IMG/VR virus record: IMGVR_UViG_3300022200_000019
Location: 62,001 to 126,000 of that record
Length of the DNA: 64,000 nt
Direction: 5' to 3' (one strand)
The notes beneath the pieces are model-generated. The model was not told where the DNA came from and did no database searches. It worked only from the letters and a program-made list of their open reading frames with translations. The translations under genes were made by a program, and so were the position numbers. Shown here piece after piece: positions 3,679-60,548 of the stretch (position 1 is the first letter of the stretch; every line of letters begins with the position of its first letter).

Positions 3679-3707
3679 AATAGGGTCTAGACAGACCCTA
3701 TTTTTTT
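3679..3707 (+). terminator. Rho-independent terminator
   Basis: aatagggtct-agac-agaccctatt followed by a T-tract. Confidence 0.8.
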
Positions 3708-3741
3708 GACTATAATATGTGTATAGTTTATTACATACCGT

Positions 3742-3761
3742 TTGTTGCAAAAATACAACAA
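3742..3761. promoter_or_regulatory. Palindromic operator-like site upstream of an early promoter
   Basis: ttgttgca-aaaa-tacaacaa, 9 nt before TTGACA; near-identical copy at 53674-53693 with the same spacing. Confidence 0.65.
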
Positions 3762-3770
3762 AATCAAGTC

Positions 3771-3799
3771 TTGACAATTCTTGTACAATTGGGTATAAT
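3771..3799 (+). promoter_or_regulatory. Sigma70-type early promoter
   Basis: TTGACA-17-TATAAT, perfect consensus. Confidence 0.85.
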
Positions 3800-4860: not shown

Positions 4861-5556
4861 ATGAGTTGGTTCATTGAAAAACCTACTATTTTAGGAATGC
4901 AGTTTAAAAATAAACTGCCAAGACCCTCAAAAACCGGTGTTGATTGGTTTTTATTTTCATACTTCTTAGAGAAGTTTAAGAACCAGCCGATGCTCGAAGT
5001 TGGAGTAGGTCAAGGTGGGAGTGCCTTAACAATGTTAAATTTTACAAAAAACTTAACAATAGTTGACTCATGGGAATATGGGTATTCAAGGGACGCATTT
5101 ATTGAATTAGCCAACAGCCATAAGTTATCATTTAATGAGATTGTGGTTAATTCACAAAATTTTATTCCAACAGAAATATATAGTTTTGTACATTTAGACG
5201 CAGATAAAGAATATAATAGCGTGATGCATACACTAGAGACAGTTAGTAATTATTGTACAGATATTATCTGTGTCGACGATTATTTACAATCGTTGTGGCC
5301 AGAAGTGTCATGGGCGGTAGATGACTGGGTAAAAACGTCAGGTTGGAAGAGGTTTTTTACAGGCAATCATCAAGTCTTTTTAAGTAAAAAAGCATACCCA
5401 ATTAAACAATTAATTGCAGATTTGCCGTTGATGAATAATAAAGAAGGATATCAACTGACTTATGGCAAACTTCCTCAAAATGAGTTTATTGATAACGGAC
5501 CATTAACATATACGTGGCACGAAGTACAACAACGGGAAAAGAGTTTAATACTCTAA
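4861..5556 (+). CDS. SAM-dependent methyltransferase (Methyltransf_24-like)
   Basis: LEVGVGQGGS, IVDSW, FVHLDADK, VDDY. Confidence 0.65.
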   Translation: MSWFIEKPTILGMQFKNKLPRPSKTGVDWFLFSYFLEKFKNQPMLEVGVGQGGSALTMLNFTKNLTIVDSWEYGYSRDAFIELANSHKLSFNEIVVNSQNFIPTEIYSFVHLDADKEYNSVMHTLETVSNYCTDIICVDDYLQSLWPEVSWAVDDWVKTSGWKRFFTGNHQVFLSKKAYPIKQLIADLPLMNNKEGYQLTYGKLPQNEFIDNGPLTYTWHEVQQREKSLIL

Positions 5557-5561
5557 GGTTT

Positions 5562-5646
5562 TAAACTAGAGAACACAATTGCTATGTTGAACTCCTAAGT
5601 TCTCTGGTTTATTTGGCGCAAGATGAAATACTCTTGCGCCTTTTTT
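5562..5646 (+). ncRNA. Candidate 3'-UTR-derived sRNA: hairpin with anti-SD loop plus terminator
   Basis: 13-bp stem 5562-5574/5599-5611, 24-nt loop containing TTGCTATGTTGAACTCCT, then terminator ggcgcaaga/tcttgcgcc plus T-tract. Confidence 0.5.
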
Positions 5647-5662
5647 ATTTTTGTGTTATAAT
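5634..5662 (+). promoter_or_regulatory. Sigma70-type promoter overlapping the terminator
   Basis: TTGCGC-17-TATAAT with TGn extension; ATG 6 nt downstream (leaderless). Confidence 0.6.
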
Positions 5663-5668
5663 ATTGTT

Positions 5669-6787
5669 ATGATTCGTAAAGTAATCGACAGAGAAACAGC
5701 ACACTTGTGGATGCGTGAGAATTTACGCTTTAGTCGTTATGATATTAACTTCGTAGAAAATGTTGCTCGTTTCATTAATGACAACCGCCCGCTTACTGTT
5801 AAACAGAACGATTTATGGGAAAAGATTGTTCATAAGTATCGTAAGCAGATTTATAACGAAAGTCAGAACACACTCACAGATGAAGATATCCTAGCCAAGC
5901 AGTGGCGCCAAGGCCCTGTAGAGTTTGATCCTAGTTACGCTCCGTTGTTGTGGATCGAAGATGATGTTATTAAACTTCGTTTTCCGTTTAACAAAGACGC
6001 AGTCGCTGACTTGCGTACAGTAATTCAAGATGCTGGTCACGATTATGGATTAATGATGTCTTCTGTACATCATGAGTATATTCACTGGGATAGAGACGAA
6101 CGTGTATGGCGTGGTACCGCGTATCCTACCTTAATTCGAGACTTGTACTATTATTCTAAAGATCATAATTTTACTATAGATAAATCAGTTCAAGACATAG
6201 TAGATAGCATTCCTGGAGATGAGTTTGATTGGCGCCCATACGCTGAGTTATATGGTGACAGCTATATGATTAGTAATTTAAGTCCTGGATTATTAAAAGC
6301 ATTGCCACCTAATGAGATTACTCTCAACGCCGTTAGAGATCTTGTCGGATTAGAAGTTACATTAAGTGATACACTACAAAGTTATGTGGCACAGAAATAT
6401 GGATACCATATTGGACGAATTGCTTGTCAACGCGAAGTACGCATTGATATGAACGATATCAAATTGGTCAAACAGTGGCTTAGAGAAACAGATAACGATA
6501 TCTTTGTTGTACATAAGCAGTATGCTGATTATGCTGAAAATTTTAAATTAGAACAACAAACACTTGTTCCTGAAAAGTTTGTGAGTTTAGCAGACTTCAG
6601 AAACACCGCTGGCGGCATTGGTGATTATCATGTGTTTAGCAAAGATGGCGACAACTATACATTAGATAACGGTGTTGATTGTGTAGTTTATATGCCCGGA
6701 ACAGCGTTTAATTACGAAGCACTTGCACACATTGCTAAAAAGGTTATTACAGTAGTAGAAGATGAAACAAGCACGATTAATAATTAA
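5669..6787 (+). CDS. Hypothetical protein upstream of the helicase
   Basis: Long ORF overlapping the next gene; in-frame ATG 5669 directly after the -10 box. Confidence 0.6.
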   Translation: MIRKVIDRETAHLWMRENLRFSRYDINFVENVARFINDNRPLTVKQNDLWEKIVHKYRKQIYNESQNTLTDEDILAKQWRQGPVEFDPSYAPLLWIEDDVIKLRFPFNKDAVADLRTVIQDAGHDYGLMMSSVHHEYIHWDRDERVWRGTAYPTLIRDLYYYSKDHNFTIDKSVQDIVDSIPGDEFDWRPYAELYGDSYMISNLSPGLLKALPPNEITLNAVRDLVGLEVTLSDTLQSYVAQKYGYHIGRIACQREVRIDMNDIKLVKQWLRETDNDIFVVHKQYADYAENFKLEQQTLVPEKFVSLADFRNTAGGIGDYHVFSKDGDNYTLDNGVDCVVYMPGTAFNYEALAHIAKKVITVVEDETSTINN

Positions 6788-19565: not shown

Positions 19566-19901
19566 ATGGCTTATTATACATCAACAGCTAAAACCCACCT
19601 AAGCAACGGCCTAGGTTCAAAGACTCGCATCGTTAGTGCTACTATCGGTGGCGGTATTTCTGAAGCAGCTCTAAAAGAACTGCTAGAACTAATGTCTGCT
19701 GGTGGTACTGCTGGTACTGACGATGCAGTAACTATCGCTGGTGTTGGTACTGCTACAGGTGCTGCATTTGACGCTGGTACAACTACTGTTGTTTACCTAG
19801 CCGTACAAGGTTCAGGTACACTAACTCCAGGTTCTAGCTACCGTGGTACTTCTTTCACAACTGCTCTAGTTTGTGACTTTGATGATCACCTAGCACCATA
19901 A
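19566..19901 (+). CDS. Probable abundant virion protein (decoration-type)
   Basis: Own late promoter, strong RBS, biased codons, Gly/Ala/Thr-rich, own terminator. Confidence 0.55.
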   Translation: MAYYTSTAKTHLSNGLGSKTRIVSATIGGGISEAALKELLELMSAGGTAGTDDAVTIAGVGTATGAAFDAGTTTVVYLAVQGSGTLTPGSSYRGTSFTTALVCDFDDHLAP

Positions 19902-19921
19902 GTTAATTATTAACTTATACG

Positions 19922-19950
19922 AAAAGCCCAGTTTCGCACTGGGCTTTTTT
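19922..19950 (+). terminator. Rho-independent terminator
   Basis: aaaagcccagt-ttcgc-actgggctttttt. Confidence 0.85.
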
Positions 19951-20591: not shown

Positions 20592-21049
20592 TTAACATAG
20601 ACAAGATAACCGAGAAAGTCAAACAATTCTTTGATCGTGAAGGATTACCACCCATTGTTCAAGATGGTGAATGTTACCATGTGCTGGGCAAGTACATGAT
20701 CAACCACACAAACCATGTGTATGAATTATATAAACATGATCAGTATGTGAACACAGTAGCATCCAGTGCAGTTGCACTCAGTTGGTGTATATTTGACAAT
20801 AAAAATGATTGGATGCACACACACCAGTTGTTAACAAATGATAAAAAAATTCAGGAATATCGTTTTCAGATCGAAAACAGGAAACGCATACTAAAAACTG
20901 CCAAAGATCCTGATGATCGTGAATGGTTGCTGATCAGAATTGCTGAAGATCTGGAACGTATGCGAGAGGCAAAACGCAATCTTGATAAAACTGTTAAATT
21001 GACTAAATATATTAAAATTAAGGGATTTAACGATTATGAATCTAGATGA
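20588..21049 (+). CDS. Hypothetical protein
   Basis: ATGA-coupled ORF. Confidence 0.55.
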   Translation: MINIDKITEKVKQFFDREGLPPIVQDGECYHVLGKYMINHTNHVYELYKHDQYVNTVASSAVALSWCIFDNKNDWMHTHQLLTNDKKIQEYRFQIENRKRILKTAKDPDDREWLLIRIAEDLERMREAKRNLDKTVKLTKYIKIKGFNDYESR

Positions 21050-25714: not shown

Positions 25715-26133
25715 TGTGGGCCACTCGATATGATGATCGCCTGCTTGAATGGAGAAATCTCAGATCTGAATCTGTTATTCTTGATCTGGAACCAGCACTC
25801 ATACAAGTAGATACCTGGTGGCAACGTGCTCCATTATCCAATCGTTATCTGCACATGGATGAATATGAAAAATGGCCGCTTCCCTGGGATTTATTGGCAG
25901 ATGACATCTATGATGATCTTGCAAAGTGCCTGGGAATCTGTTATACTTTAATGCTATTAAAGCATCCAGATATTCAAACCATTGACATATTACAACTAGA
26001 AGACTTTTACGTTGTGGCAGTGAACAATGACTACATATTAAATTATATACCCAACGAAATAGTAAATAGAAATACAATTGATGGTTTCAAAATCAAAAGA
26101 TCGTTATCAAGCGACAACATAACACTAGAATAA
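25714..26133 (+). CDS. Hypothetical protein
   Basis: TAATG-coupled ORF, WPLPWDLL motif. Confidence 0.55.
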   Translation: MWATRYDDRLLEWRNLRSESVILDLEPALIQVDTWWQRAPLSNRYLHMDEYEKWPLPWDLLADDIYDDLAKCLGICYTLMLLKHPDIQTIDILQLEDFYVVAVNNDYILNYIPNEIVNRNTIDGFKIKRSLSSDNITLE

Positions 26134-26145
26134 CAAGAGGCAAAA

Positions 26146-35759: not shown

Positions 35760-36959
35760 ATGTCACAAACAAATACAGAAACAAGTATTAACGAATGTAG
35801 TTTTTGCGGTAAAGCAAAGGAAGAAGTAGTCAAACTTATCGTCGGCGATGGTGTTAGTATTTGTAATAACTGCGTAGAGTTTTGTGTTGAGTTATTAGAA
35901 GAAGAAAAACCTATTAATAAACAAAAACACGAAGCAAAAGATATTGATCCAGTGGAACTTAAAGAGTATTTAGATCAGTTTGTCATTGGGCAGGAGCAAG
36001 CCAAGATGGTGTTAAGTGTTGCTGTTGCTAATCATTATAAACGTATCAACAAAAAAGGTGATGTTAAAGTTGATAAAAGTAATGTATTATTACTTGGCCC
36101 CACCGGGTCAGGTAAAACGTTACTTGCTAAGTCAATTGCTGAATATTTAGACGTACCATTTGCTATTGCTGATGCTACATCATTAACAGAAGCAGGCTAC
36201 GTAGGGGACGATGTTGAAGTATTAATTAGCCGTTTACTACAAAATGCAAATGGCGATGTAGAACGTGCGCAACGTGGTATTGTGTTCGTTGATGAAATTG
36301 ATAAAATTTCACGCAAGTCCGAATCTGCTAGCGTAACACGAGATGTATCTGGTGAGGGCGTGCAACAAGCATTACTTAAAATGGTAGAAGGCACGGTTGT
36401 GCGTGTTCCTAATACCGGCAATAGAAAACACCCAGCCGGAGAAATGACCGAAGTTGATACCAAAAACATTTTGTTCATTGCTGCTGGTGCATTTGTTGGA
36501 TTAGATGAAATTCTTAAAAAGCGTGTACAGGGTGCTGGTATCGGATTTGGAGCAGATGTTAATCGTGTTGATACTACTAAAGTCGACCTATTGCCAGCAG
36601 ATTTAATCAAGTTTGGACTTATCCCAGAATTTGTAGGACGGTTTGCTAGTTTTGCTTTTGTACAAGAACTTTCTCGTGAAGACATGGTATATATTTTAAC
36701 TAGTGTTGAAAACAGTCTATTGCGTCAATTTGAATATTTGTTTAAGTGTAATGAAGTTGAATTAGAATTTGATCCAGAAGCATTGTTGTTAGTTGTAGAT
36801 AAAACAATTGAACAAAAAACTGGCGCACGTGGATTGCGAGCAGAATTAGAGAAGGTATTGTTGCCGCATATGTTTAATTTAGTGCGCTATCACAAAAATA
36901 ATATAAAAAATGTGGTTATTTCTAGGGATTTAATAAATACACCTATAGCATTATTATAA
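35760..36959 (+). CDS. clpX: ATP-dependent Clp protease ATPase subunit ClpX
   Basis: CSFCGK..CNNC zinc domain, [41 protein letters not shown] loop. Confidence 0.95.
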
Positions 36960-36968: not shown

Positions 36969-37202
36969 ATGATCAAACCAAAAGGCACAAAAGTATACGT
37001 AAAAGACGGCAATGTTGAAAAAGCATTGCGTAAACTAAAAAAGAAAGTACAGCGAGGCAACGTACTTCAAGAAGTTAAAGAACGTCAAAGTTACGTACAA
37101 CCATCACAAAAACGTAAAGCCGCTAAAGAAGCAGCAAAGCGACGTTGGGCAAAACACGTTCGTTCGCAAGAATTACCAGTAAAACCTCGCGGTAAGTGGT
37201 AG
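36969..37202 (+). CDS. rpsU: Ribosomal protein bS21
   Basis: VKDGNVEKALRKLKKK...EVKERQSYVQPSQKRK..K.AA.RR. Confidence 0.88.
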   Translation: MIKPKGTKVYVKDGNVEKALRKLKKKVQRGNVLQEVKERQSYVQPSQKRKAAKEAAKRRWAKHVRSQELPVKPRGKW

Positions 37203-52591: not shown

Positions 52592-53142
52592 TGAATGTTT
52601 GTTGGGCTTTATCGCAGGACACTCCTGCTGGTGTTGTCTCTCATGATGTATTAACCAGCGTAGCACCAATTTGGGGACCACTGTCAAAATGGCGTGAATA
52701 TCAATGCGATAATACTATTTGCTATGACTTAAAAGAAGCTAAACAAATGATTAACCGCGCATTTCACGCAGTTACACACTTTTATGTTCCAAAAAGTTTT
52801 TATATTGACTTAGGACGTCCAGTTGGCGTCAGGATGTTTGAAGGCGAATTCAAAGATAATGCTATTGCCAATAAAGAAGACATTATCTTAATGAATTTAG
52901 TTGCTAACCATGATATTGTGTTAATGTTGGGTTTTGATTTAAGTCCCGTGGATAATGATATTGACCCACTGGAACAGCGTTTTGAAAAAGCATACAGACA
53001 TAATATTAAAACTATTATAAAAGATAATCCAAACACACAATTTGTTCTAGTTAACTACGAGAAAGATTTAGCAGAAAATTTTGAAGATTTAGATAATCTA
53101 ACAATTGACACGGTCGAATCGGTAGTTGAGTTACTCATATAA
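52591..53142 (+). CDS. Hypothetical protein
   Basis: TAATG-coupled start at 52591; IVLMLGFD motif. Confidence 0.5.
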   Translation: MNVCWALSQDTPAGVVSHDVLTSVAPIWGPLSKWREYQCDNTICYDLKEAKQMINRAFHAVTHFYVPKSFYIDLGRPVGVRMFEGEFKDNAIANKEDIILMNLVANHDIVLMLGFDLSPVDNDIDPLEQRFEKAYRHNIKTIIKDNPNTQFVLVNYEKDLAENFEDLDNLTIDTVESVVELLI

Positions 53143-53170
53143 AAAGCGGGCCAATGGCCCGCTTTGTTTT
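53143..53170. terminator. Bidirectional terminator between convergent genes
   Basis: aaagcgggcc-aat-ggcccgcttt. Confidence 0.8.
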
Positions 53171-53185
53171 TGGAAATAATTCGAA

Positions 53186-53560
53186 TTATTTCTTTTTCTT
53201 AGGTGCTACTTTCTTCTTTTTAACAACAGTTTTCTTTTTAACAACAGTCTTCTTCTTTGGTGTTGATTTTTTCTTAGTAGTTGCTTTCTTAACAGCAGTC
53301 TTAGCCTTGCCCATAGCGACTTTTGCGTCTTTGGCAGTTACTTTGCCGTCACCGTCAACATCTGCAATCTTCTTAGCAGTAGCAGTTGCCTTAGCAGCTA
53401 CTTCTTCGACTTTAGCTTTTGCTTCTGTGCCTAGTACCTTAAGGTCTGCGGCATCTACTTTGCCATCATTGTTCAAGTCGAGACCAGTGCCTTTTTCGCG
53501 AACAATTGAATAAACCAAATATGCTGCGATCGCCACAGCAACAATAATGATAATTTCCAT
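53186..53560 (-). CDS. Membrane-anchored protein with two Dx[DN]xDG loops and a Lys-rich tail
   Basis: N-terminal TM; DLNNDGKVDAAD, DVDGDGKVTAKD; KKKTVVKKK tail; GGAG RBS. Confidence 0.7.
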   Translation of the reverse strand: MEIIIIVAVAIAAYLVYSIVREKGTGLDLNNDGKVDAADLKVLGTEAKAKVEEVAAKATATAKKIADVDGDGKVTAKDAKVAMGKAKTAVKKATTKKKSTPKKKTVVKKKTVVKKKKVAPKKKK

Positions 53561-57713: not shown

Positions 57714-58122
57714 TCCAACAATAGAACTTATTCTTGAATTAGAAGTTATTAATCATAACGGCGACCCTGTTATTGAAGTATTTTTAAATAACGAGAGAAT
57801 TTATGGGAAATATCCGTTAACAAGTTTCCGCAGAATTTATACTAGGTTGGGTTTATTGGAACCTGTTAAACTAGAAATATCAATGAGCAATAAACAATAT
57901 AATTCTAAACAAGAAACTGCAATTAATATTAAAAACTTTTTTATTGATGATATTAATATAATCCCAACTTATAATCATCTGATAGATTATCAAAACGATC
58001 ATAATATAAACACTAAAACAAATTATCTTGGATATAATGGTACTTGGACACTAGATATCAACCGTCCGTTTTACCAATGGTTACACCAAGCAACTGGTCA
58101 AGGCTGGTTACTTGAGCCATAA
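57682..58122 (+). CDS. Hypothetical protein
   Basis: ORF overlapping the end of the radical SAM gene. Confidence 0.5.
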   Translation: MKNFYELLDTNPTIELILELEVINHNGDPVIEVFLNNERIYGKYPLTSFRRIYTRLGLLEPVKLEISMSNKQYNSKQETAINIKNFFIDDINIIPTYNHLIDYQNDHNINTKTNYLGYNGTWTLDINRPFYQWLHQATGQGWLLEP

Positions 58123-58154
58123 AAATTTTTTATGAAAAAAATTCAAAAAAGTAG

Positions 58155-58270
58155 TAGACATACCAAAAAATAGATTGTATAATACACATATTGCTCAAGG
58201 AAATCCTGTAGCAAGATTTTTGAAAAATTGTTAACAAAGTGGTTGACAAGGTTTCAAAAACGTGTATAAT
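58155..58270 (+). promoter_or_regulatory. Tandem sigma70-type early promoters
   Basis: TAGACA-17-TATAAT (58155-58183) and TTGACA-16-TATAAT (58243-58270). Confidence 0.75.
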
Positions 58271-58340
58271 ACACGAACATGTTTAGATATTAAGCATGGT
58301 GATAATTTTAACTTTTAACCTTTTATAAGGAATTTTGAAA

Positions 58341-58586
58341 ATGGCACTTATTAAGCTCTCAACTTCACAGAACCGTTTCCTCCACGATCATCTGCGTGGC
58401 ACCGGTCGCTCACTTACCGCAGCACAAGCTCGTGCAACCTATGGCATTCAGAACATTCGTGCTCGCATGACCGAACTGCGCCACAAGGGTCTGGTTGTAC
58501 GCACTGAAAAGAATACCGCTGGCCATACGGCTTACAGTATCTCAGCTCGTGACATTTGTGGTTCACGTGCTAAGGCATCGGTCTAA
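58341..58586 (+). CDS. Small winged-helix DNA-binding protein
   Basis: SLTAAQARATYGIQNIRARMTELRHKGLVV..Y; AAGGA RBS. Confidence 0.65.
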   Translation: MALIKLSTSQNRFLHDHLRGTGRSLTAAQARATYGIQNIRARMTELRHKGLVVRTEKNTAGHTAYSISARDICGSRAKASV

Positions 58587-58663
58587 CTTACAGTTATAGT
58601 AACTTGACATGCCTCCTTTGTTAGGTTAGACCAAAATACAGGGGCTCTTCGGAGCCCCTTTTT
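58580..58663 (+). ncRNA. Candidate 3'-UTR-derived sRNA: hairpin with anti-SD loop plus terminator
   Basis: Stem ggtctaactta/taggttagacc, loop ending GCCTCCTT, then aggggctc-TTCG-gagcccct-tttt. Confidence 0.5.
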
Positions 58664-58689
58664 AATAATCTTGTATCTGGAGTCTTATC

Positions 58690-59046
58690 ATGGAATTCTC
58701 ACTTACCTGGGCAGATCTTCTGAGTATCTTTGCAGGTTACATTGCCGTGCGCTGGTTGATGAAATCGGTCAAAGTAGATGTAATATACAAATATGGTGCT
58801 GATGATATCGAAGAGATCGAAGAAGAAATCATTGAAGCAGTAGATGCAAAACATATTCGTATGCGTGTTGAACGTGAGTGCGGAACACTGCTTGCTTATG
58901 ATGTACACACAAATGCATTTGTGGCGCAAGGACATACCTGGGACGAACTGGGAGAAAACTTCCAGGATCGCTATCCAGAACGCATTGGTTGGGTTATGCC
59001 CGAACGTGATGGTGACCCACATCGTATGATTCCAAACGCCAAATAA
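58690..59046 (+). CDS. Hypothetical membrane-anchored protein
   Basis: GGAG RBS, N-terminal TM. Confidence 0.6.
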   Translation: MEFSLTWADLLSIFAGYIAVRWLMKSVKVDVIYKYGADDIEEIEEEIIEAVDAKHIRMRVERECGTLLAYDVHTNAFVAQGHTWDELGENFQDRYPERIGWVMPERDGDPHRMIPNAK

Positions 59047-59055
59047 GGAAATATT

Positions 59056-59283
59056 ATGGAACTTCGTAATCTTGTACCCGAACAAAAAATTTCAGTTAAA
59101 ATTGCCAATTGGACACACAAAACTACTATTCAAGAATATTCACACATAATTGCTGATCCCAGATATATTGAATCTGTGAGCCAAGGGTTACAATCACTCG
59201 ATGATGGTCTGGAAGATACGATTAACCTGGTGGGTGTTTCTGGTTTTTGGAATGGTATTGAAACGTCAATCGATCTGATCTGA
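59056..59283 (+). CDS. Hypothetical protein
   Basis: AAGGA RBS. Confidence 0.5.
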   Translation: MELRNLVPEQKISVKIANWTHKTTIQEYSHIIADPRYIESVSQGLQSLDDGLEDTINLVGVSGFWNGIETSIDLI

Positions 59284-59311
59284 TACGTAAATACCTTGAC
59301 CAAAGGATTTT

Positions 59312-59833
59312 ATGGGGAAAGGATTAGAGACATTAATTGCAGTATCCAGGGCTCGTGATCCTGATCAGGATGCTCAGTACACTAGCAAATATACAGTTGC
59401 AAAAAGGATAAACTCAACATGTGCTTTGCCTGGTTGTACTGAACATCTGACGCTCTACAAGGGACCTGGTAGCAGGTTGCTTTGCAGAACACATCAGTTG
59501 CGTATGCGAGAATACGGTGGACCCGGTAGACTGGATCGCAAATGGAGTTTCTGGAAAAAAGACTATTGTGAAGAATGCGGCCATAATCCCAAGGACAACA
59601 GTCAACTAGCCCATCTGGATGAACCACTCAGAAGCACGCTGGCAAACATGATGCTGCATGTGGATCATGTTAATGCTGCTGGCAAAGACAAATATTCAAA
59701 TACCGACGTTAATCATCGAGATAACCTGCGTACATTGTGCATGGAATGTCACGCAATAAAAACATTACTGGGCGGAGATCACTGGAAAGACAGCTTCCAT
59801 TCAAATGAATCTGACAACGAAACAAATAACTGA
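59312..59833 (+). CDS. HNH endonuclease
   Basis: CEECG, LHVDHV, NHRDNLRTLCMECHAIKT. Confidence 0.8.
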   Translation: MGKGLETLIAVSRARDPDQDAQYTSKYTVAKRINSTCALPGCTEHLTLYKGPGSRLLCRTHQLRMREYGGPGRLDRKWSFWKKDYCEECGHNPKDNSQLAHLDEPLRSTLANMMLHVDHVNAAGKDKYSNTDVNHRDNLRTLCMECHAIKTLLGGDHWKDSFHSNESDNETNN

Positions 59834-60548
59834 CCGTATTGATTACAATACTCGATTGGCGCTAAATGCCATAAATTCAGGCCAGTCTATTTTTTGCATA
59901 TTGCCTTTCGTCAAAGTGGTTGATTATGATAATCTGCTGCATGGTAACAAAATTATCAGAAACATCAACGACATAATTCCAGCAATCATGTTGGGTCTGT
60001 TGCCAGCAGTTGCCCGTCATGGTTATGATGCCGTAGGCATCGAGGATGATGAAATAATTGAATATGAACTTAAAATTTCATCTTTTAACACCCAACAAGT
60101 ATGGTCTGGTTCACGGGGTGCCTTATACATTGGTCTGGAAAATACGCCTGCACGCAGAGTACGCCTTGTTTCTTATTTGTGCGGTTCATTCAACATTAAC
60201 AGTGACGCTTGTCGAGAGTCAAAAAACAGAAAAACCATCCTATTAGTGGCTAATGAATCTTTGCCACCTGAAGAGTTGTTTGTTGATGCATATGAATTAT
60301 CAGGCAATGTTGTCATGAAATATCTGAACAAATCACTTAATTCAATACGCACTATTAAATTGGGTACATTTTTGAATTATGGCAACCCCAAAACAGGTAT
60401 TGTGCCATTTATTGGATGGCACAGGCATTATAGAGATCTGGAACAGATTGTTGAAAACTACGAAGATTGGAAATACCATCAGGGTAACGATTATCGGTTG
60501 GAAAACCTGTCGCTATCTGACGCTAAACAAACCGAATTGCAACTGTAA
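59805..60548 (+). CDS. Hypothetical protein, possibly PD-(D/E)XK nuclease-like
   Basis: GYDAV...EYELK motif. Confidence 0.4.
   Translation: MNLTTKQITDRIDYNTRLALNAINSGQSIFCILPFVKVVDYDNLLHGNKIIRNINDIIPAIMLGLLPAVARHGYDAVGIEDDEIIEYELKISSFNTQQVWSGSRGALYIGLENTPARRVRLVSYLCGSFNINSDACRESKNRKTILLVANESLPPEELFVDAYELSGNVVMKYLNKSLNSIRTIKLGTFLNYGNPKTGIVPFIGWHRHYRDLEQIVENYEDWKYHQGNDYRLENLSLSDAKQTELQL

What the first reader, a model, noticed from the sequence alone, without database searches (positions are those of the whole stretch)
58580..58663. Second hairpin RNA of the same architecture with a CCUCCU anti-SD loop (candidate sRNA 2)
Seen: directly after the winged-helix gene, which has tandem strong promoters, an 11-13-bp stem encloses a ~26-nt loop ending GCCTCCTT. 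A short spacer and a UUCG terminator follow. The layout is the same as at 5562, but the sequence is unrelated apart from CTCCT at the 3' side of the loop. Its complement TAACAAAGGAGGCA resembles the nrdA RBS (TAACAAGAGGCA, 26131-26142), and nrdB also uses GAGGCA. Inference: a family of phage anti-SD RNAs mimicking the 16S rRNA 3' end, aimed at phage or host mRNAs.
Basis: partly seen in the sequence, partly recalled or inferred. Interest (0 to 1): 0.72.

Follow-up and report, generated by a model that had tools for sequence, protein, structure and literature searches.

The report
Conserved anti-SD hairpin ending phage transcripts
An uncultured freshwater giant phage ends two of its most strongly promoted transcripts with a conserved RNA hairpin that displays a copy of the ribosome's own mRNA-docking sequence (CCUCC), so it probably interferes with how ribosomes find messages, but it is a tail on ordinary mRNAs, not a separate small-RNA gene, and its function is untested.

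Summary
Bases 58580-58632 fold into a hairpin whose 5' arm contains the stop codon of a winged-helix gene. CCUCCU stays unpaired in its loop, and a UUCG intrinsic terminator follows. Relatives from metagenomes keep the stem through compensatory changes. All wobble pairs are U.G on the + strand, so the sense RNA is the functional form. The 5' half of the loop is unalignable, but the 3' half (UUGACAU...CCUCC) changes more slowly than synonymous codon sites. The element at 5562 is conserved in the same way: five compensatory pairs, an invariant loop GUUGAACUCC, and a tandem duplicate in one relative. These are the only two units in the 213-kb contig with the tandem TAGACA/TTGACA promoter design. 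CUCC/CCUC is also enriched in pre-terminator 3'UTRs of distant homologues of the winged-helix gene. The phage encodes ribosomal protein bS21, which sits next to the 16S anti-SD.

There is no own promoter, so this is an mRNA 3' end, not a free-standing sRNA gene. nrdA/nrdB are not conserved targets. No extended target exists in the phage genome. No pairing with the unit's own or the downstream SD is conserved.

Best reading (about 0.35): an anti-SD RNA module that pairs with GGAG-type ribosome-binding sites. It matches no Rfam family.

The parts
58155..58183 (+). Promoter P1 of the winged-helix unit (TAGACA-17-TATAAT)
   Evidence: 11/12 consensus match. A tandem promoter pair is kept in relatives.
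58243..58270 (+). Promoter P2 (TTGACA-16-TATAAT), 88 bp after P1
   Evidence: 12/12 match.
58341..58586 (+). Winged-helix gene (81 aa); SD UAAGGA at 58326-58331; stop TAA at 58584-58586
   Evidence: Pfam HTH_39 E 5e-10; 34 homologues; AlphaFold model pLDDT 87.
58580..58593 (+). 5' arm of hairpin 1; contains the last codons and the stop codon of the gene
   Evidence: Pairs conserved with compensatory changes.
58594..58617 (+). Loop. The 5' half is variable. The 3' half is conserved: UUGACAU 58604-58610, CCUCC 58612-58616.
   Evidence: Alignment A3. The conserved 29-nt block (58604-58632, loop 3' half plus 3' arm) is 92% identical pairwise against 79% at third codon positions. Unpaired probability >= 0.96.
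58601..58610 (+). Alternative 5' arm (UAACUUGACA), a near-repeat of the first arm. It can pair with 58620-58629 when the first arm is covered, leaving a 9-nt loop UGCCUCCUU.
   Evidence: Kept in the window, L014 and L015; weakened in L016 and L018; not evident in other subclades.
58618..58632 (+). 3' arm of hairpin 1 (non-coding, conserved)
58640..58663 (+). Intrinsic terminator: 8-bp stem, UUCG loop, U tract
   Evidence: stem conserved with one compensatory pair.
58690..60548 (+). Four downstream genes (118, 75, 173 and 247 aa) with no >= 11/12 promoter before 60552. They probably depend on read-through of the terminator.
   Evidence: The same tight spacing is found in relatives.
3688..3799 (+). 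Tandem promoters of the sister unit (TAGACA-17-TATAAT at 3688-3716; TTGACA-17-TATAAT at 3771-3799)
   Evidence: This is the only other such pair in the contig.
5562..5611 (+). Sister hairpin: arms 5562-5574 and 5599-5611; loop 5575-5598 with invariant GUUGAACUCC at 5586-5595. The upstream stop codon is at 5554-5556.
   Evidence: Conserved in L280-L284 with 5 compensatory pairs. In the relatives the stop codons lie inside the 5' arm.
5615..5646 (+). Intrinsic terminator of the sister unit
36969..37202 (+). Phage gene for a ribosomal protein bS21 homologue (77 aa). This is context: bS21 lies beside the 16S anti-SD.
   Evidence: PF01165 E 6.3e-17, 59 bits, above the curated cut-off.

Best explanation
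The element is the structured 3' end of a very strongly promoted, probably early, phage mRNA. A hairpin starts at the stop codon. Its loop keeps a 16S-rRNA-tail-like pyrimidine motif (CCUCC, CUCCU or CCUC) single-stranded just before the 3' arm, and an intrinsic terminator follows. The proposed mechanism is that the exposed motif base-pairs with GGAG/GAGG-type Shine-Dalgarno sequences and so competes with 30S subunits for ribosome-binding sites. The active form would be either the abundant full-length transcript or a 3' fragment cut out of it. Two such modules per genome, and two in tandem in one relative, would add binding sites.

Shown here: the RNA structure, its conservation, the accessibility and conservation of the motif, the shared design of the two units, and the absence of an own promoter.

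Inferred: that the motif acts by pairing with SD sequences, that it acts in trans, and that the targets are host or phage mRNAs.
For: 1. The fold is stable and non-random.
2. The stem is conserved: 99.5% of cells are paired. The covariation score is 0.232 against 0.167 in shuffles (0 of 500 reach it) and at most 0.127 in slid controls. There are compensatory C-G<->U-A changes, and every wobble is U.G on the + strand.
3. The loop 5' half is unalignable. The 29-nt block from UUGACA to the end of the 3' arm is 92% identical pairwise, against 79% at third codon positions of the adjacent gene.
4. The variants CCUCCUU, ACCUCCU, CACUCCU and CACCUC-UUA are all pieces of the 16S tail. One subclade shifts from CUCC to CCUC, which keeps SD complementarity.
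5. CUCCU is unpaired in both alternative folds.
6. The 5562 hairpin is independently conserved, with 5 compensatory pairs and invariant GUUGAACUCC. It is duplicated in tandem in L284.
7. A descriptor for the shared design hits only these two locus types in 1.04 Mb of related DNA: 29 hits on the + strand against 1 on the - strand.
8. Both units, and only these two, have the TAGACA/TTGACA tandem promoter pair.
9. In distant homologues of the winged-helix gene, 13 of 25 dereplicated long 3'UTRs carry CUCC/CCUC, against 4.8 +/- 1.8 in shuffles. The reverse motif GGAG/GAGG occurs in only 3. Some are 7-nt loops YYGCUCC on covarying stems.
10. The phage encodes bS21, the protein that contacts the SD-anti-SD helix (PMC9723584).
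Against: - There is no direct evidence of expression as a discrete RNA. Only one 165-nt metatranscriptome contig (58462-58626, depth 2.4) exists, and it continues from the CDS.
- No extended complementary site exists anywhere in the 213-kb contig.
- The start-region scan gives no outstanding target.
- A 4-8-nt anti-SD would also hit the phage's own SDs. About 37% of crude gene starts have an SD, against 12% at random positions.
- About 60% of homologues of the winged-helix gene have only a plain terminator.
- The conserved UUGA[A/C] next to the motif, and the stop codon inside the 5' arm, are not explained by simple SD pairing.
- The host is unknown, so host targets cannot be examined.
Confidence: 0.35

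Rival explanations
1. A cis-acting 3'-end control element coupled to translation termination. A ribosome reaching the stop codon in the 5' arm melts the hairpin. The refolded RNA, or a protein bound to it, then sets mRNA stability, translation of its own message (a 5'-3' UTR contact as in icaR), or read-through of the terminator into the promoter-less downstream genes.
For: - The stop codon lies inside or within 6 nt of the 5' arm in both element types, behind at least three different upstream genes.
- A second copy of the 5' arm inside the loop gives an alternative hairpin when the first arm is masked.
- Genes 58690-60548 have no strong promoter of their own.
- In subclade 1 the 3' arm plus motif can pair with UAACCU...AAGGA of the unit's own 5'UTR.
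- The motif travels with the winged-helix gene across distant phages that have different downstream genes.
- Precedent: the icaR 3'UTR anti-SD motif (PMC3868564).
Against: - The 5'-3' pairing is absent in L015 and in subclades 2 and 3, and z-scores are not significant.
- The SD of the winged-helix gene is UAAGGA throughout the family and does not covary with the loop.
- The downstream SD does not covary either.
- No alternative pairing between the hairpin and the terminator arms was found beyond 4-5 bp.
- The 5562 unit and most distant homologues are followed by a promoter, so read-through is not needed there.
- The alternative arm is weak or absent outside subclade 1 (and inspection of A3).
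Confidence: 0.25
2. A protein-binding RNA that imitates the 3' tail of 16S rRNA, or simply presents a specific loop. It would recruit or titrate a factor that normally handles that tail or the hairpin: phage or host bS21, Era, a 16S-end nuclease or toxin, S1, or the winged-helix protein itself.
For: - The motif plus flanks resembles the 16S end. UUGACAU-ACCUCCUUU in L016 matches ...ACCUCCUU, and GAUCCCUCC / GAUCGCUCC occur in distant clades.
- A conserved UUGA[A/C] beside CUCC is easier to explain by protein or tertiary recognition than by SD pairing.
- The phage carries bS21.
- Repeated identical loops occur in distant clades (GUAGUG loops) and in L284, as is typical of protein-binding hairpins.
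Against: - The match to GAUCACCUCC with up to 2 errors is only about 2-fold enriched: 13/124 UTRs against 21/372 background windows.
- The change from CUCC to CCUC in one subclade fits pairing better than a fixed protein site.
- The winged-helix fold gives no hint of RNA binding.
Confidence: 0.15
3. An ordinary pre-terminator stabilising hairpin that protects the 3' end or spaces the terminator from the terminating ribosome. The CUCC motif would have no function of its own.
For: About half of the + strand terminators in this contig are preceded by some hairpin directly after a stop codon. No target or partner was found.
Against: - The other pre-terminator hairpins have short loops and no shared loop motif.
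- The loop 3' half is under stronger constraint than synonymous sites while the 5' half drifts freely.
- The motif recurs in two unrelated hairpins, in a tandem duplicate and in distant lineages.
Confidence: 0.15
4. A DNA-level or minus-strand feature: an operator or promoter (the TTGACA in the loop), a small mobile inverted repeat, or a mini-ORF with its own SD on the minus strand (AAGGAGG-C-ATG).
For: The minus strand reads as an SD followed by ATG TCA in most relatives. TTGACA equals the -35 consensus.
Against: - The minus-strand ORFs are 4-15 codons long and not conserved, and the SD-ATG spacing is 1 nt in subclade 1.
- A terminator that also works on the minus strand blocks entry, and no good minus-strand promoter exists.
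- No -10 element follows TTGACA at 16-18 bp (TAGACC / AATTAG).
- All wobble pairs are U.G on the + strand, which would be A.C mismatches on the other strand.
- There are only two copies in 213 kb.
Confidence: 0.03

Closest known systems
icaR mRNA 3'UTR anti-SD motif of Staphylococcus aureus (PMC3868564)
   Same: A C/U-rich anti-SD-like motif sits in the 3'UTR of a short mRNA for a small DNA-binding regulator. It is proposed to act by pairing with an SD.
   Different: In icaR an extended 3'UTR-5'UTR duplex covers the gene's own SD. Here the complementarity to the unit's own SD is 3-5 bp and is not conserved. Here too the motif sits in a hairpin loop at the stop codon next to a terminator, the element is phage-borne, and it occurs behind unrelated genes.
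sRNAs of Firmicutes with C-rich loops, such as RNAIII and RsaE/RoxS (from general knowledge)
   Same: Hairpin loops expose UCCC/CUCC-type motifs that pair with SD sequences, and several loops can cooperate. The tandem copy in L284 is comparable.
   Different: Those are independent genes with their own promoters. This element is the tail of an mRNA, has one loop per unit, and its 5' arm is coding.
3'UTR-derived sRNAs of enterobacteria, such as CpxQ, SroC and RaiZ (from general knowledge)
   Same: The element shares the terminator of the parent mRNA. The conserved seed-like block lies just upstream of the terminator, while sequence further 5' drifts.
   Different: No processing site, 5' end or chaperone dependence is known here. 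The seed would be a generic anti-SD, not a gene-specific sequence.
Lambda nut / HK022 put antitermination RNAs (from general knowledge)
   Same: A structured RNA lies just before a terminator that precedes promoter-less genes, next to a small basic early regulator gene.
   Different: There is no boxA (GCUCUUUA) or boxB-like pentaloop. The 5562 unit and most distant homologues are followed by promoters.
3' tail of 16S rRNA (GAUCACCUCCUUA)
   Same: The loop carries 4-8 nt identical to the tail: CCUCCUU in the window and ACCUCCUUU in L016/L018.
   Different: The motif is presented inside a hairpin loop of an mRNA. The similarity beyond the CCUCC core is statistically weak.

Membership tests
Intrinsic (Rho-independent) terminator | G+C-rich stem, short loop, 3' U tract | tested here: met
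   58640-58663: 8 bp, UUCG loop, 5 U. Conserved in relatives.
Any Rfam family | Score at or above the family's gathering threshold | tested here: not met
   No hit in the window at gathering thresholds. The best sub-threshold match over the element (58586-58674) is Atu_C8, 20 bits against a 50-bit threshold; no match in 58100-58720 exceeds 23 bits or reaches its threshold. Nothing but tRNAs in 20 homologous loci.
Independent trans-encoded sRNA gene | Own promoter upstream of the RNA | tested here: not met
   No promoter-like site lies between the CDS and the hairpin. TATAGT at 58595-58600 has no -35 and is not conserved. The 5' arm is coding.
3'UTR-derived (processed) sRNA | Shares the mRNA's terminator; seed block upstream of it is more conserved than its surroundings | tested here: met
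3'UTR-derived (processed) sRNA | Defined 5' end from processing; accumulates as a discrete species | not testable with these tools
   Only one low-depth metatranscriptome contig spans the CDS and hairpin.
3'UTR-derived (processed) sRNA | Identifiable complementary target(s) | tested here: inconclusive
   No extended site in the phage contig. nrdA ranks 36/687. The host is unknown. There is no exact 22-nt match in the 185,579 species-representative bacterial and archaeal genomes.
icaR-type 5'-3' UTR anti-SD interaction | Anti-SD-like motif in the 3'UTR | tested here: met
   CCUCC at 58612-58616, unpaired.
icaR-type 5'-3' UTR anti-SD interaction | Extended, conserved complementarity to the gene's own SD region | tested here: not met
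   Present only in subclade 1. z-scores range from -2.4 to +1.3 across homologues. The gene's own SD, UAAGGA, is invariant while the loop varies.
nut/put-type antitermination RNA | boxA consensus plus boxB hairpin, or two-stem put fold | tested here: not met
   No GCUCUUUA is present. There is a single hairpin with a large loop.
nut/put-type antitermination RNA | Lies upstream of a terminator that gates promoter-less genes | tested here: inconclusive
   True for 58580 and its close relatives. Not true for 5562 or for most distant homologues.
One family with the 5562 element | Detectable sequence/structure homology | tested here: not met
   Covariance model R1 does not find 5562. The pairwise alignment shows no similarity beyond short motifs.
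One family with the 5562 element | Same design: stop-codon-proximal stem, loop ending UUGA[A/C]-N0-8-CUCC, terminator, tandem promoters | tested here: met

The most novel reading that the evidence does not exclude
The hairpins are mimics of the 16S rRNA 3' tail and belong to a phage programme that rewires translation initiation, together with the phage-encoded bS21. Made in large amounts from the strongest early promoters, they would mask strong SD sites on host mRNAs or titrate a factor that handles the 16S tail (bS21, Era, or a tail-directed nuclease or toxin). Initiation would then shift towards phage messages with weak or no SD. Examples are the apparently leaderless gene right after the 5562 element and the SD-less bS21 gene.
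Probability: 0.12. Interest if true: 0.85.

Novelty: new variant of a known kind. Interest (0 to 1): 0.6.

Why it matters
Regulatory RNAs of phages are poorly charted, and none is known that carries a conserved copy of the ribosome's anti-SD at the end of early mRNAs. If the loop really competes for ribosome-binding sites or for a factor of the 30S platform, it would be a small RNA-based route to host translation shut-off or to timing of phage gene expression. It would sit in a lineage that also carries its own bS21. That combination would make the long-standing question of why phages encode bS21 more testable. Even at the minimum, the work defines two covariation-supported RNA motifs absent from Rfam. 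It also shows that homologues of one winged-helix early gene are recurrently followed by structured RNA.

Tried and rejected
- Close or distant DNA and protein matches of the locus in 50,697 deposited phage genomes: none.
- Single-protein searches in IMG/VR, and an exact-pattern search for the element: none.
- Relatives were reached only through the 5.8-billion-protein index and the alignment-based scans.
- Rfam at gathering and at permissive thresholds: nothing.
- nrdA/nrdB as targets: rejected.
- A phage gene whose start region is complementary to the whole loop (SD + ATGTCAA): none. The only SD + ATGTCAA site lies in a spurious antisense ORF.
- An exact 22-nt complement in the 185,579 species-representative bacterial and archaeal genomes: none.
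- Host clue from winged-helix homologues in bacterial genomes: a single hit, in a MAG contig, which carries only a 4-bp stop-codon hairpin and no motif.
- Pairing of the loop with the unit's own 5'UTR/SD: not conserved.
- Pairing with the downstream SD, the terminator arm, or the hairpin between P1 and P2: only 4-5 bp and not conserved (inspection).
- An internal promoter for a separate sRNA: none conserved.
- The minus-strand mini-ORF and the promoter reading of TTGACA: rejected (see rivals).
- Covariance model of the 58580 type: it finds only generic hairpin-plus-terminator sites elsewhere, not 5562.
- Extended 16S-tail mimicry (GAUCACCUCC): only weakly enriched.
- RegA and RegB homologues in the contig: none found, but the control genomes were silent too, so this is uninformative.
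- Distant homologues of the gene upstream of 5562: different context, uninformative.
- RNA-seq: one low-depth contig only.
- Fold search of the winged-helix protein: generic winged-helix matches only.

Full report
WHAT IS THERE

The window is bases 62001-126000 of a single 212,917-bp metagenomic phage contig. It has 39% G+C, comes from freshwater, and CheckV estimates it at 61% complete.

At 58580-58663 the + strand folds into two hairpins, with MFE -33 kcal/mol and z = -4.8.
- The first hairpin pairs 58580-58593 with 58618-58632.
- Its 5' arm holds the last codons and the TAA stop (58584-58586) of an 81-aa winged-helix gene (Pfam HTH_39; AlphaFold model pLDDT 87, generic winged-helix matches only).
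- The loop contains UUGACAU (58604-58610) and CCUCC (58612-58616). CUCCU has an unpaired probability of at least 0.96.
- After a 7-nt spacer comes an 8-bp UUCG terminator with a U tract.
- The gene has two near-consensus sigma-70 promoters 88 bp apart.
- The four genes after the terminator have no strong promoter until 60552.

IS IT MORE THAN CHANCE?

CCTCC occurs only 19 times on the + strand of the contig and CCTCCTT twice. A contig-wide terminator scan finds a long-stem, large-loop hairpin before a terminator only here and at 5562. The stronger argument is comparative.

No deposited phage genome matches the locus. The protein index gave 34 homologues of the winged-helix protein, and contig look-ups and alignment-based scans gave about 170 loci.

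Eleven distinct sequences from three subclades (80-98% protein identity) keep the hairpin and the terminator (A3).
- 99.5% of stem cells are paired. Two pairs of hairpin 1 and one terminator pair switch C-G<->U-A.
- The covariation score exceeds all 500 shuffles and all slid controls.
- Every wobble pair is U.G on the + strand, so the selected structure is that of the sense RNA.
- Within the loop, the 5' half cannot be aligned even between close relatives.
- The block from UUGACA to the end of the 3' arm is 92% identical pairwise, against 79% at third codon positions of the adjacent gene.
- The motif reads GCCUCCUUU, UCCUCCUUU, ACCUCCUCU, CACUCCUCA, UACUCCUCU and CACCUCUUA. These are always 4-7 letters of the 16S tail CACCUCCUUA.

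THE SISTER ELEMENT

The 5562 hairpin could not be judged from the gene upstream of it. Relatives of that gene are either identical or too distant. Anchoring on the downstream 372-aa gene gave five relatives at 66-92% identity.
- All carry the hairpin, with five compensatory stem pairs and an invariant loop decamer GUUGAACUCC.
- One relative (L284) has two copies in tandem, with different stems and the same loop motif.
- The upstream genes differ, yet in the four distinct relatives (L280, L281, L283, L284) their stop codons lie inside the 5' arm. In the window the stop is 6 nt before the arm.

The two element types share no alignable sequence, but they share a design:
- a stem next to a stop codon;
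- a loop ending in UUGA[A/C], 0-8 nt, then CUCC, just before the 3' arm;
- a short spacer and a strong terminator.

A descriptor for this design hits only these two locus types in 1.04 Mb of related phage DNA: 29 hits on the + strand and 1 on the - strand. The two units are also the only ones in the contig with a TAGACA-17-TATAAT promoter followed 83-88 bp later by a TTGACA-16/17-TATAAT promoter.

DISTANT HOMOLOGUES

Of 124 distinct 3' regions of winged-helix homologues, 52 have a plain terminator within 25 nt of the stop. The scan found no terminator in 41, and 31 have at least 25 nt before one.
- Among 25 dereplicated regions with at least 25 nt before the terminator, 13 carry CUCC/CCUC on the sense strand.
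- Shuffles give 4.8 +/- 1.8, and the reverse motif occurs in only 3.
- Examples are GUCGCCUCCUUUAAG (L025) and GAUCC[C/U]UCC in a large loop (L078, L129).
- Another group has 7-nt loops YYGCUCC on five different, covarying stems.
- A G+C-rich clade has a larger conserved RNA instead.

None of these matches Rfam.

WHAT IT IS NOT

It is not a free-standing sRNA gene.
- No promoter precedes it and its 5' arm is coding.
- The only RNA evidence is a 165-nt metatranscriptome contig at depth 2.4. It runs from the CDS into the hairpin.

It is not aimed at nrdA/nrdB in any conserved way.
- The nrdA start region ranks 36 of 687.
- GAGGCA is not enriched.
- The base 5' of CCUCC varies between relatives.
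- nrdB uses UAAGGA in most relatives.

No site complementary to the whole loop exists in the contig or, as an exact 22-mer, in the 185,579 species-representative bacterial and archaeal genomes.

Pairing with the unit's own 5'UTR, as in the icaR precedent (PMC3868564), exists in subclade 1 only and is not significant overall. The gene's own SD is UAAGGA throughout the family and does not follow the loop. A minus-strand mini-ORF, a promoter reading of TTGACA and a mobile repeat are all contradicted (see rivals).

HOW IT MOST LIKELY WORKS

The shown facts are a sense-strand RNA hairpin under selection. Its only conserved single-stranded letters are an anti-SD-like pentamer plus UUGA. It sits at the end of the two most strongly promoted units.

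The simplest activity of such a loop is pairing with GGAG/GAGG of ribosome-binding sites, as C-rich loops of known sRNAs do. The shift from CUCC to CCUC in one subclade keeps that complementarity. I therefore favour an anti-SD RNA module acting on other messages, either as the mRNA tail or as a processed 3' fragment (confidence 0.35).

The main rival is a cis-acting, termination-coupled element (0.25).
- The stop codon in the 5' arm is conserved behind different genes.
- A ribosome there must melt the stem.
- In subclade 1 a second copy of the arm inside the loop then forms a smaller hairpin with a 9-nt CCUCC loop.
- The downstream genes need read-through.

Against this rival, I found no conserved alternative pairing with the terminator or with any SD.

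A protein-binding 16S-tail mimic (0.15) would explain the conserved UUGA. It is made more interesting by a phage bS21 gene at 36969-37202. bS21 contacts the SD-anti-SD helix (PMC9723584; PMC7797042). Similarity to the tail beyond the core is only weakly enriched, however.

A merely structural hairpin (0.15) does not explain the pattern of constraint.

COMPARISON AND NOVELTY

The closest known things are:
- the icaR 3'UTR anti-SD motif;
- sRNAs with C-rich loops;
- 3'UTR-derived sRNAs;
- nut/put RNAs, which share only the position before a terminator.

The element fails the defining tests for an independent sRNA gene, for an icaR-type duplex, for nut/put and for every Rfam family. It meets those for an intrinsic terminator, and it shows the conservation pattern of a 3'UTR seed. 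I rate it a new variant of a known kind: a phage 3'-end RNA module with an anti-SD loop. Two covariation-supported instances exist, and the function is still open.

Noticed in passing
window 36969-37202 (+): The phage encodes a 77-aa homologue of ribosomal protein bS21 (PF01165, E 6e-17). It lies directly after a ClpX-like gene (35760-36959). No SD precedes its ATG.
   Followed up: partly
window 5650-5671; L280-L284 about 30 nt before the 372-aa gene: The 372-aa gene after the 5562 terminator has an extended -10 promoter (TGTTATAAT) ending 6-8 nt before its ATG and no SD. It is probably translated from a leaderless mRNA. The arrangement is conserved in five relatives.
   Followed up: partly
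L284:1041-1143: There are two tandem copies of the 5562-type hairpin, with different stems and the same loop motif GUUGAACUCC, before a single terminator.
   Followed up: yes
L011:3241-3361, L032, L041, L047, L049, L052, L057, L035, L096, L098, L109 (alignment A5): In a G+C-rich clade the winged-helix gene is followed by a conserved structured RNA of about 110 nt: GAUCGCUCCU, one to three hairpins with GUAGUG loops, and a long hairpin with 9 compensatory pairs and a UGCUG[G/U]GAAGCA tip. No U tract follows and there is no Rfam match.
   Followed up: partly
L030, L044, L053/55/60/63/70, L067, L077, 22-30 nt after the stop of the winged-helix gene: These loci carry hairpins with a 7-nt loop YYGCUCC on five different, mutually compensating stems, next to hairpins with GGUAGUGU loops.
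   Followed up: partly
window 58191-58221: Between promoters P1 and P2 lies a small hairpin (UUGCU...AGCAA) followed by a U run. It could be a short P1 transcript or an attenuator. It is conserved in some relatives (L014, L018, L004), with a variable loop. The sister unit has a comparable hairpin at about 3734-3757.
   Followed up: no
window 58303-58324: The 5'UTR of the winged-helix gene carries three tandem copies of UAA[U/C][U/C]UUU. These resemble the two alternative 5' arms of the hairpin and are complementary to its 3' arm. The repeats are conserved across the close clade.
   Followed up: partly
genome-wide; e.g. window 19900-19950, 53131-53197; contig 20600-20700, 35850-35950: About half of the + strand intrinsic terminators of this phage are preceded by a separate A+U-rich hairpin right after the stop codon. 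Several terminators look bidirectional.
   Followed up: no
L186-L188:2230-2330: A tRNA-like cloverleaf lies directly after the distant homologue of the methyltransferase-like gene that precedes the 5562 element. No hairpin element is present there.
   Followed up: no
L198:1737-1790 (MAG labelled Fischerella, 15-kb contig): This is the only winged-helix homologue found in the 185,579 species-representative bacterial and archaeal genomes. Its stop codon sits in a minimal GGUC-UAAUUAG-GACC hairpin before a terminator, with the same outer base pairs as the window's stem but no large loop. The contig is probably a phage contig binned with the MAG.
   Followed up: partly
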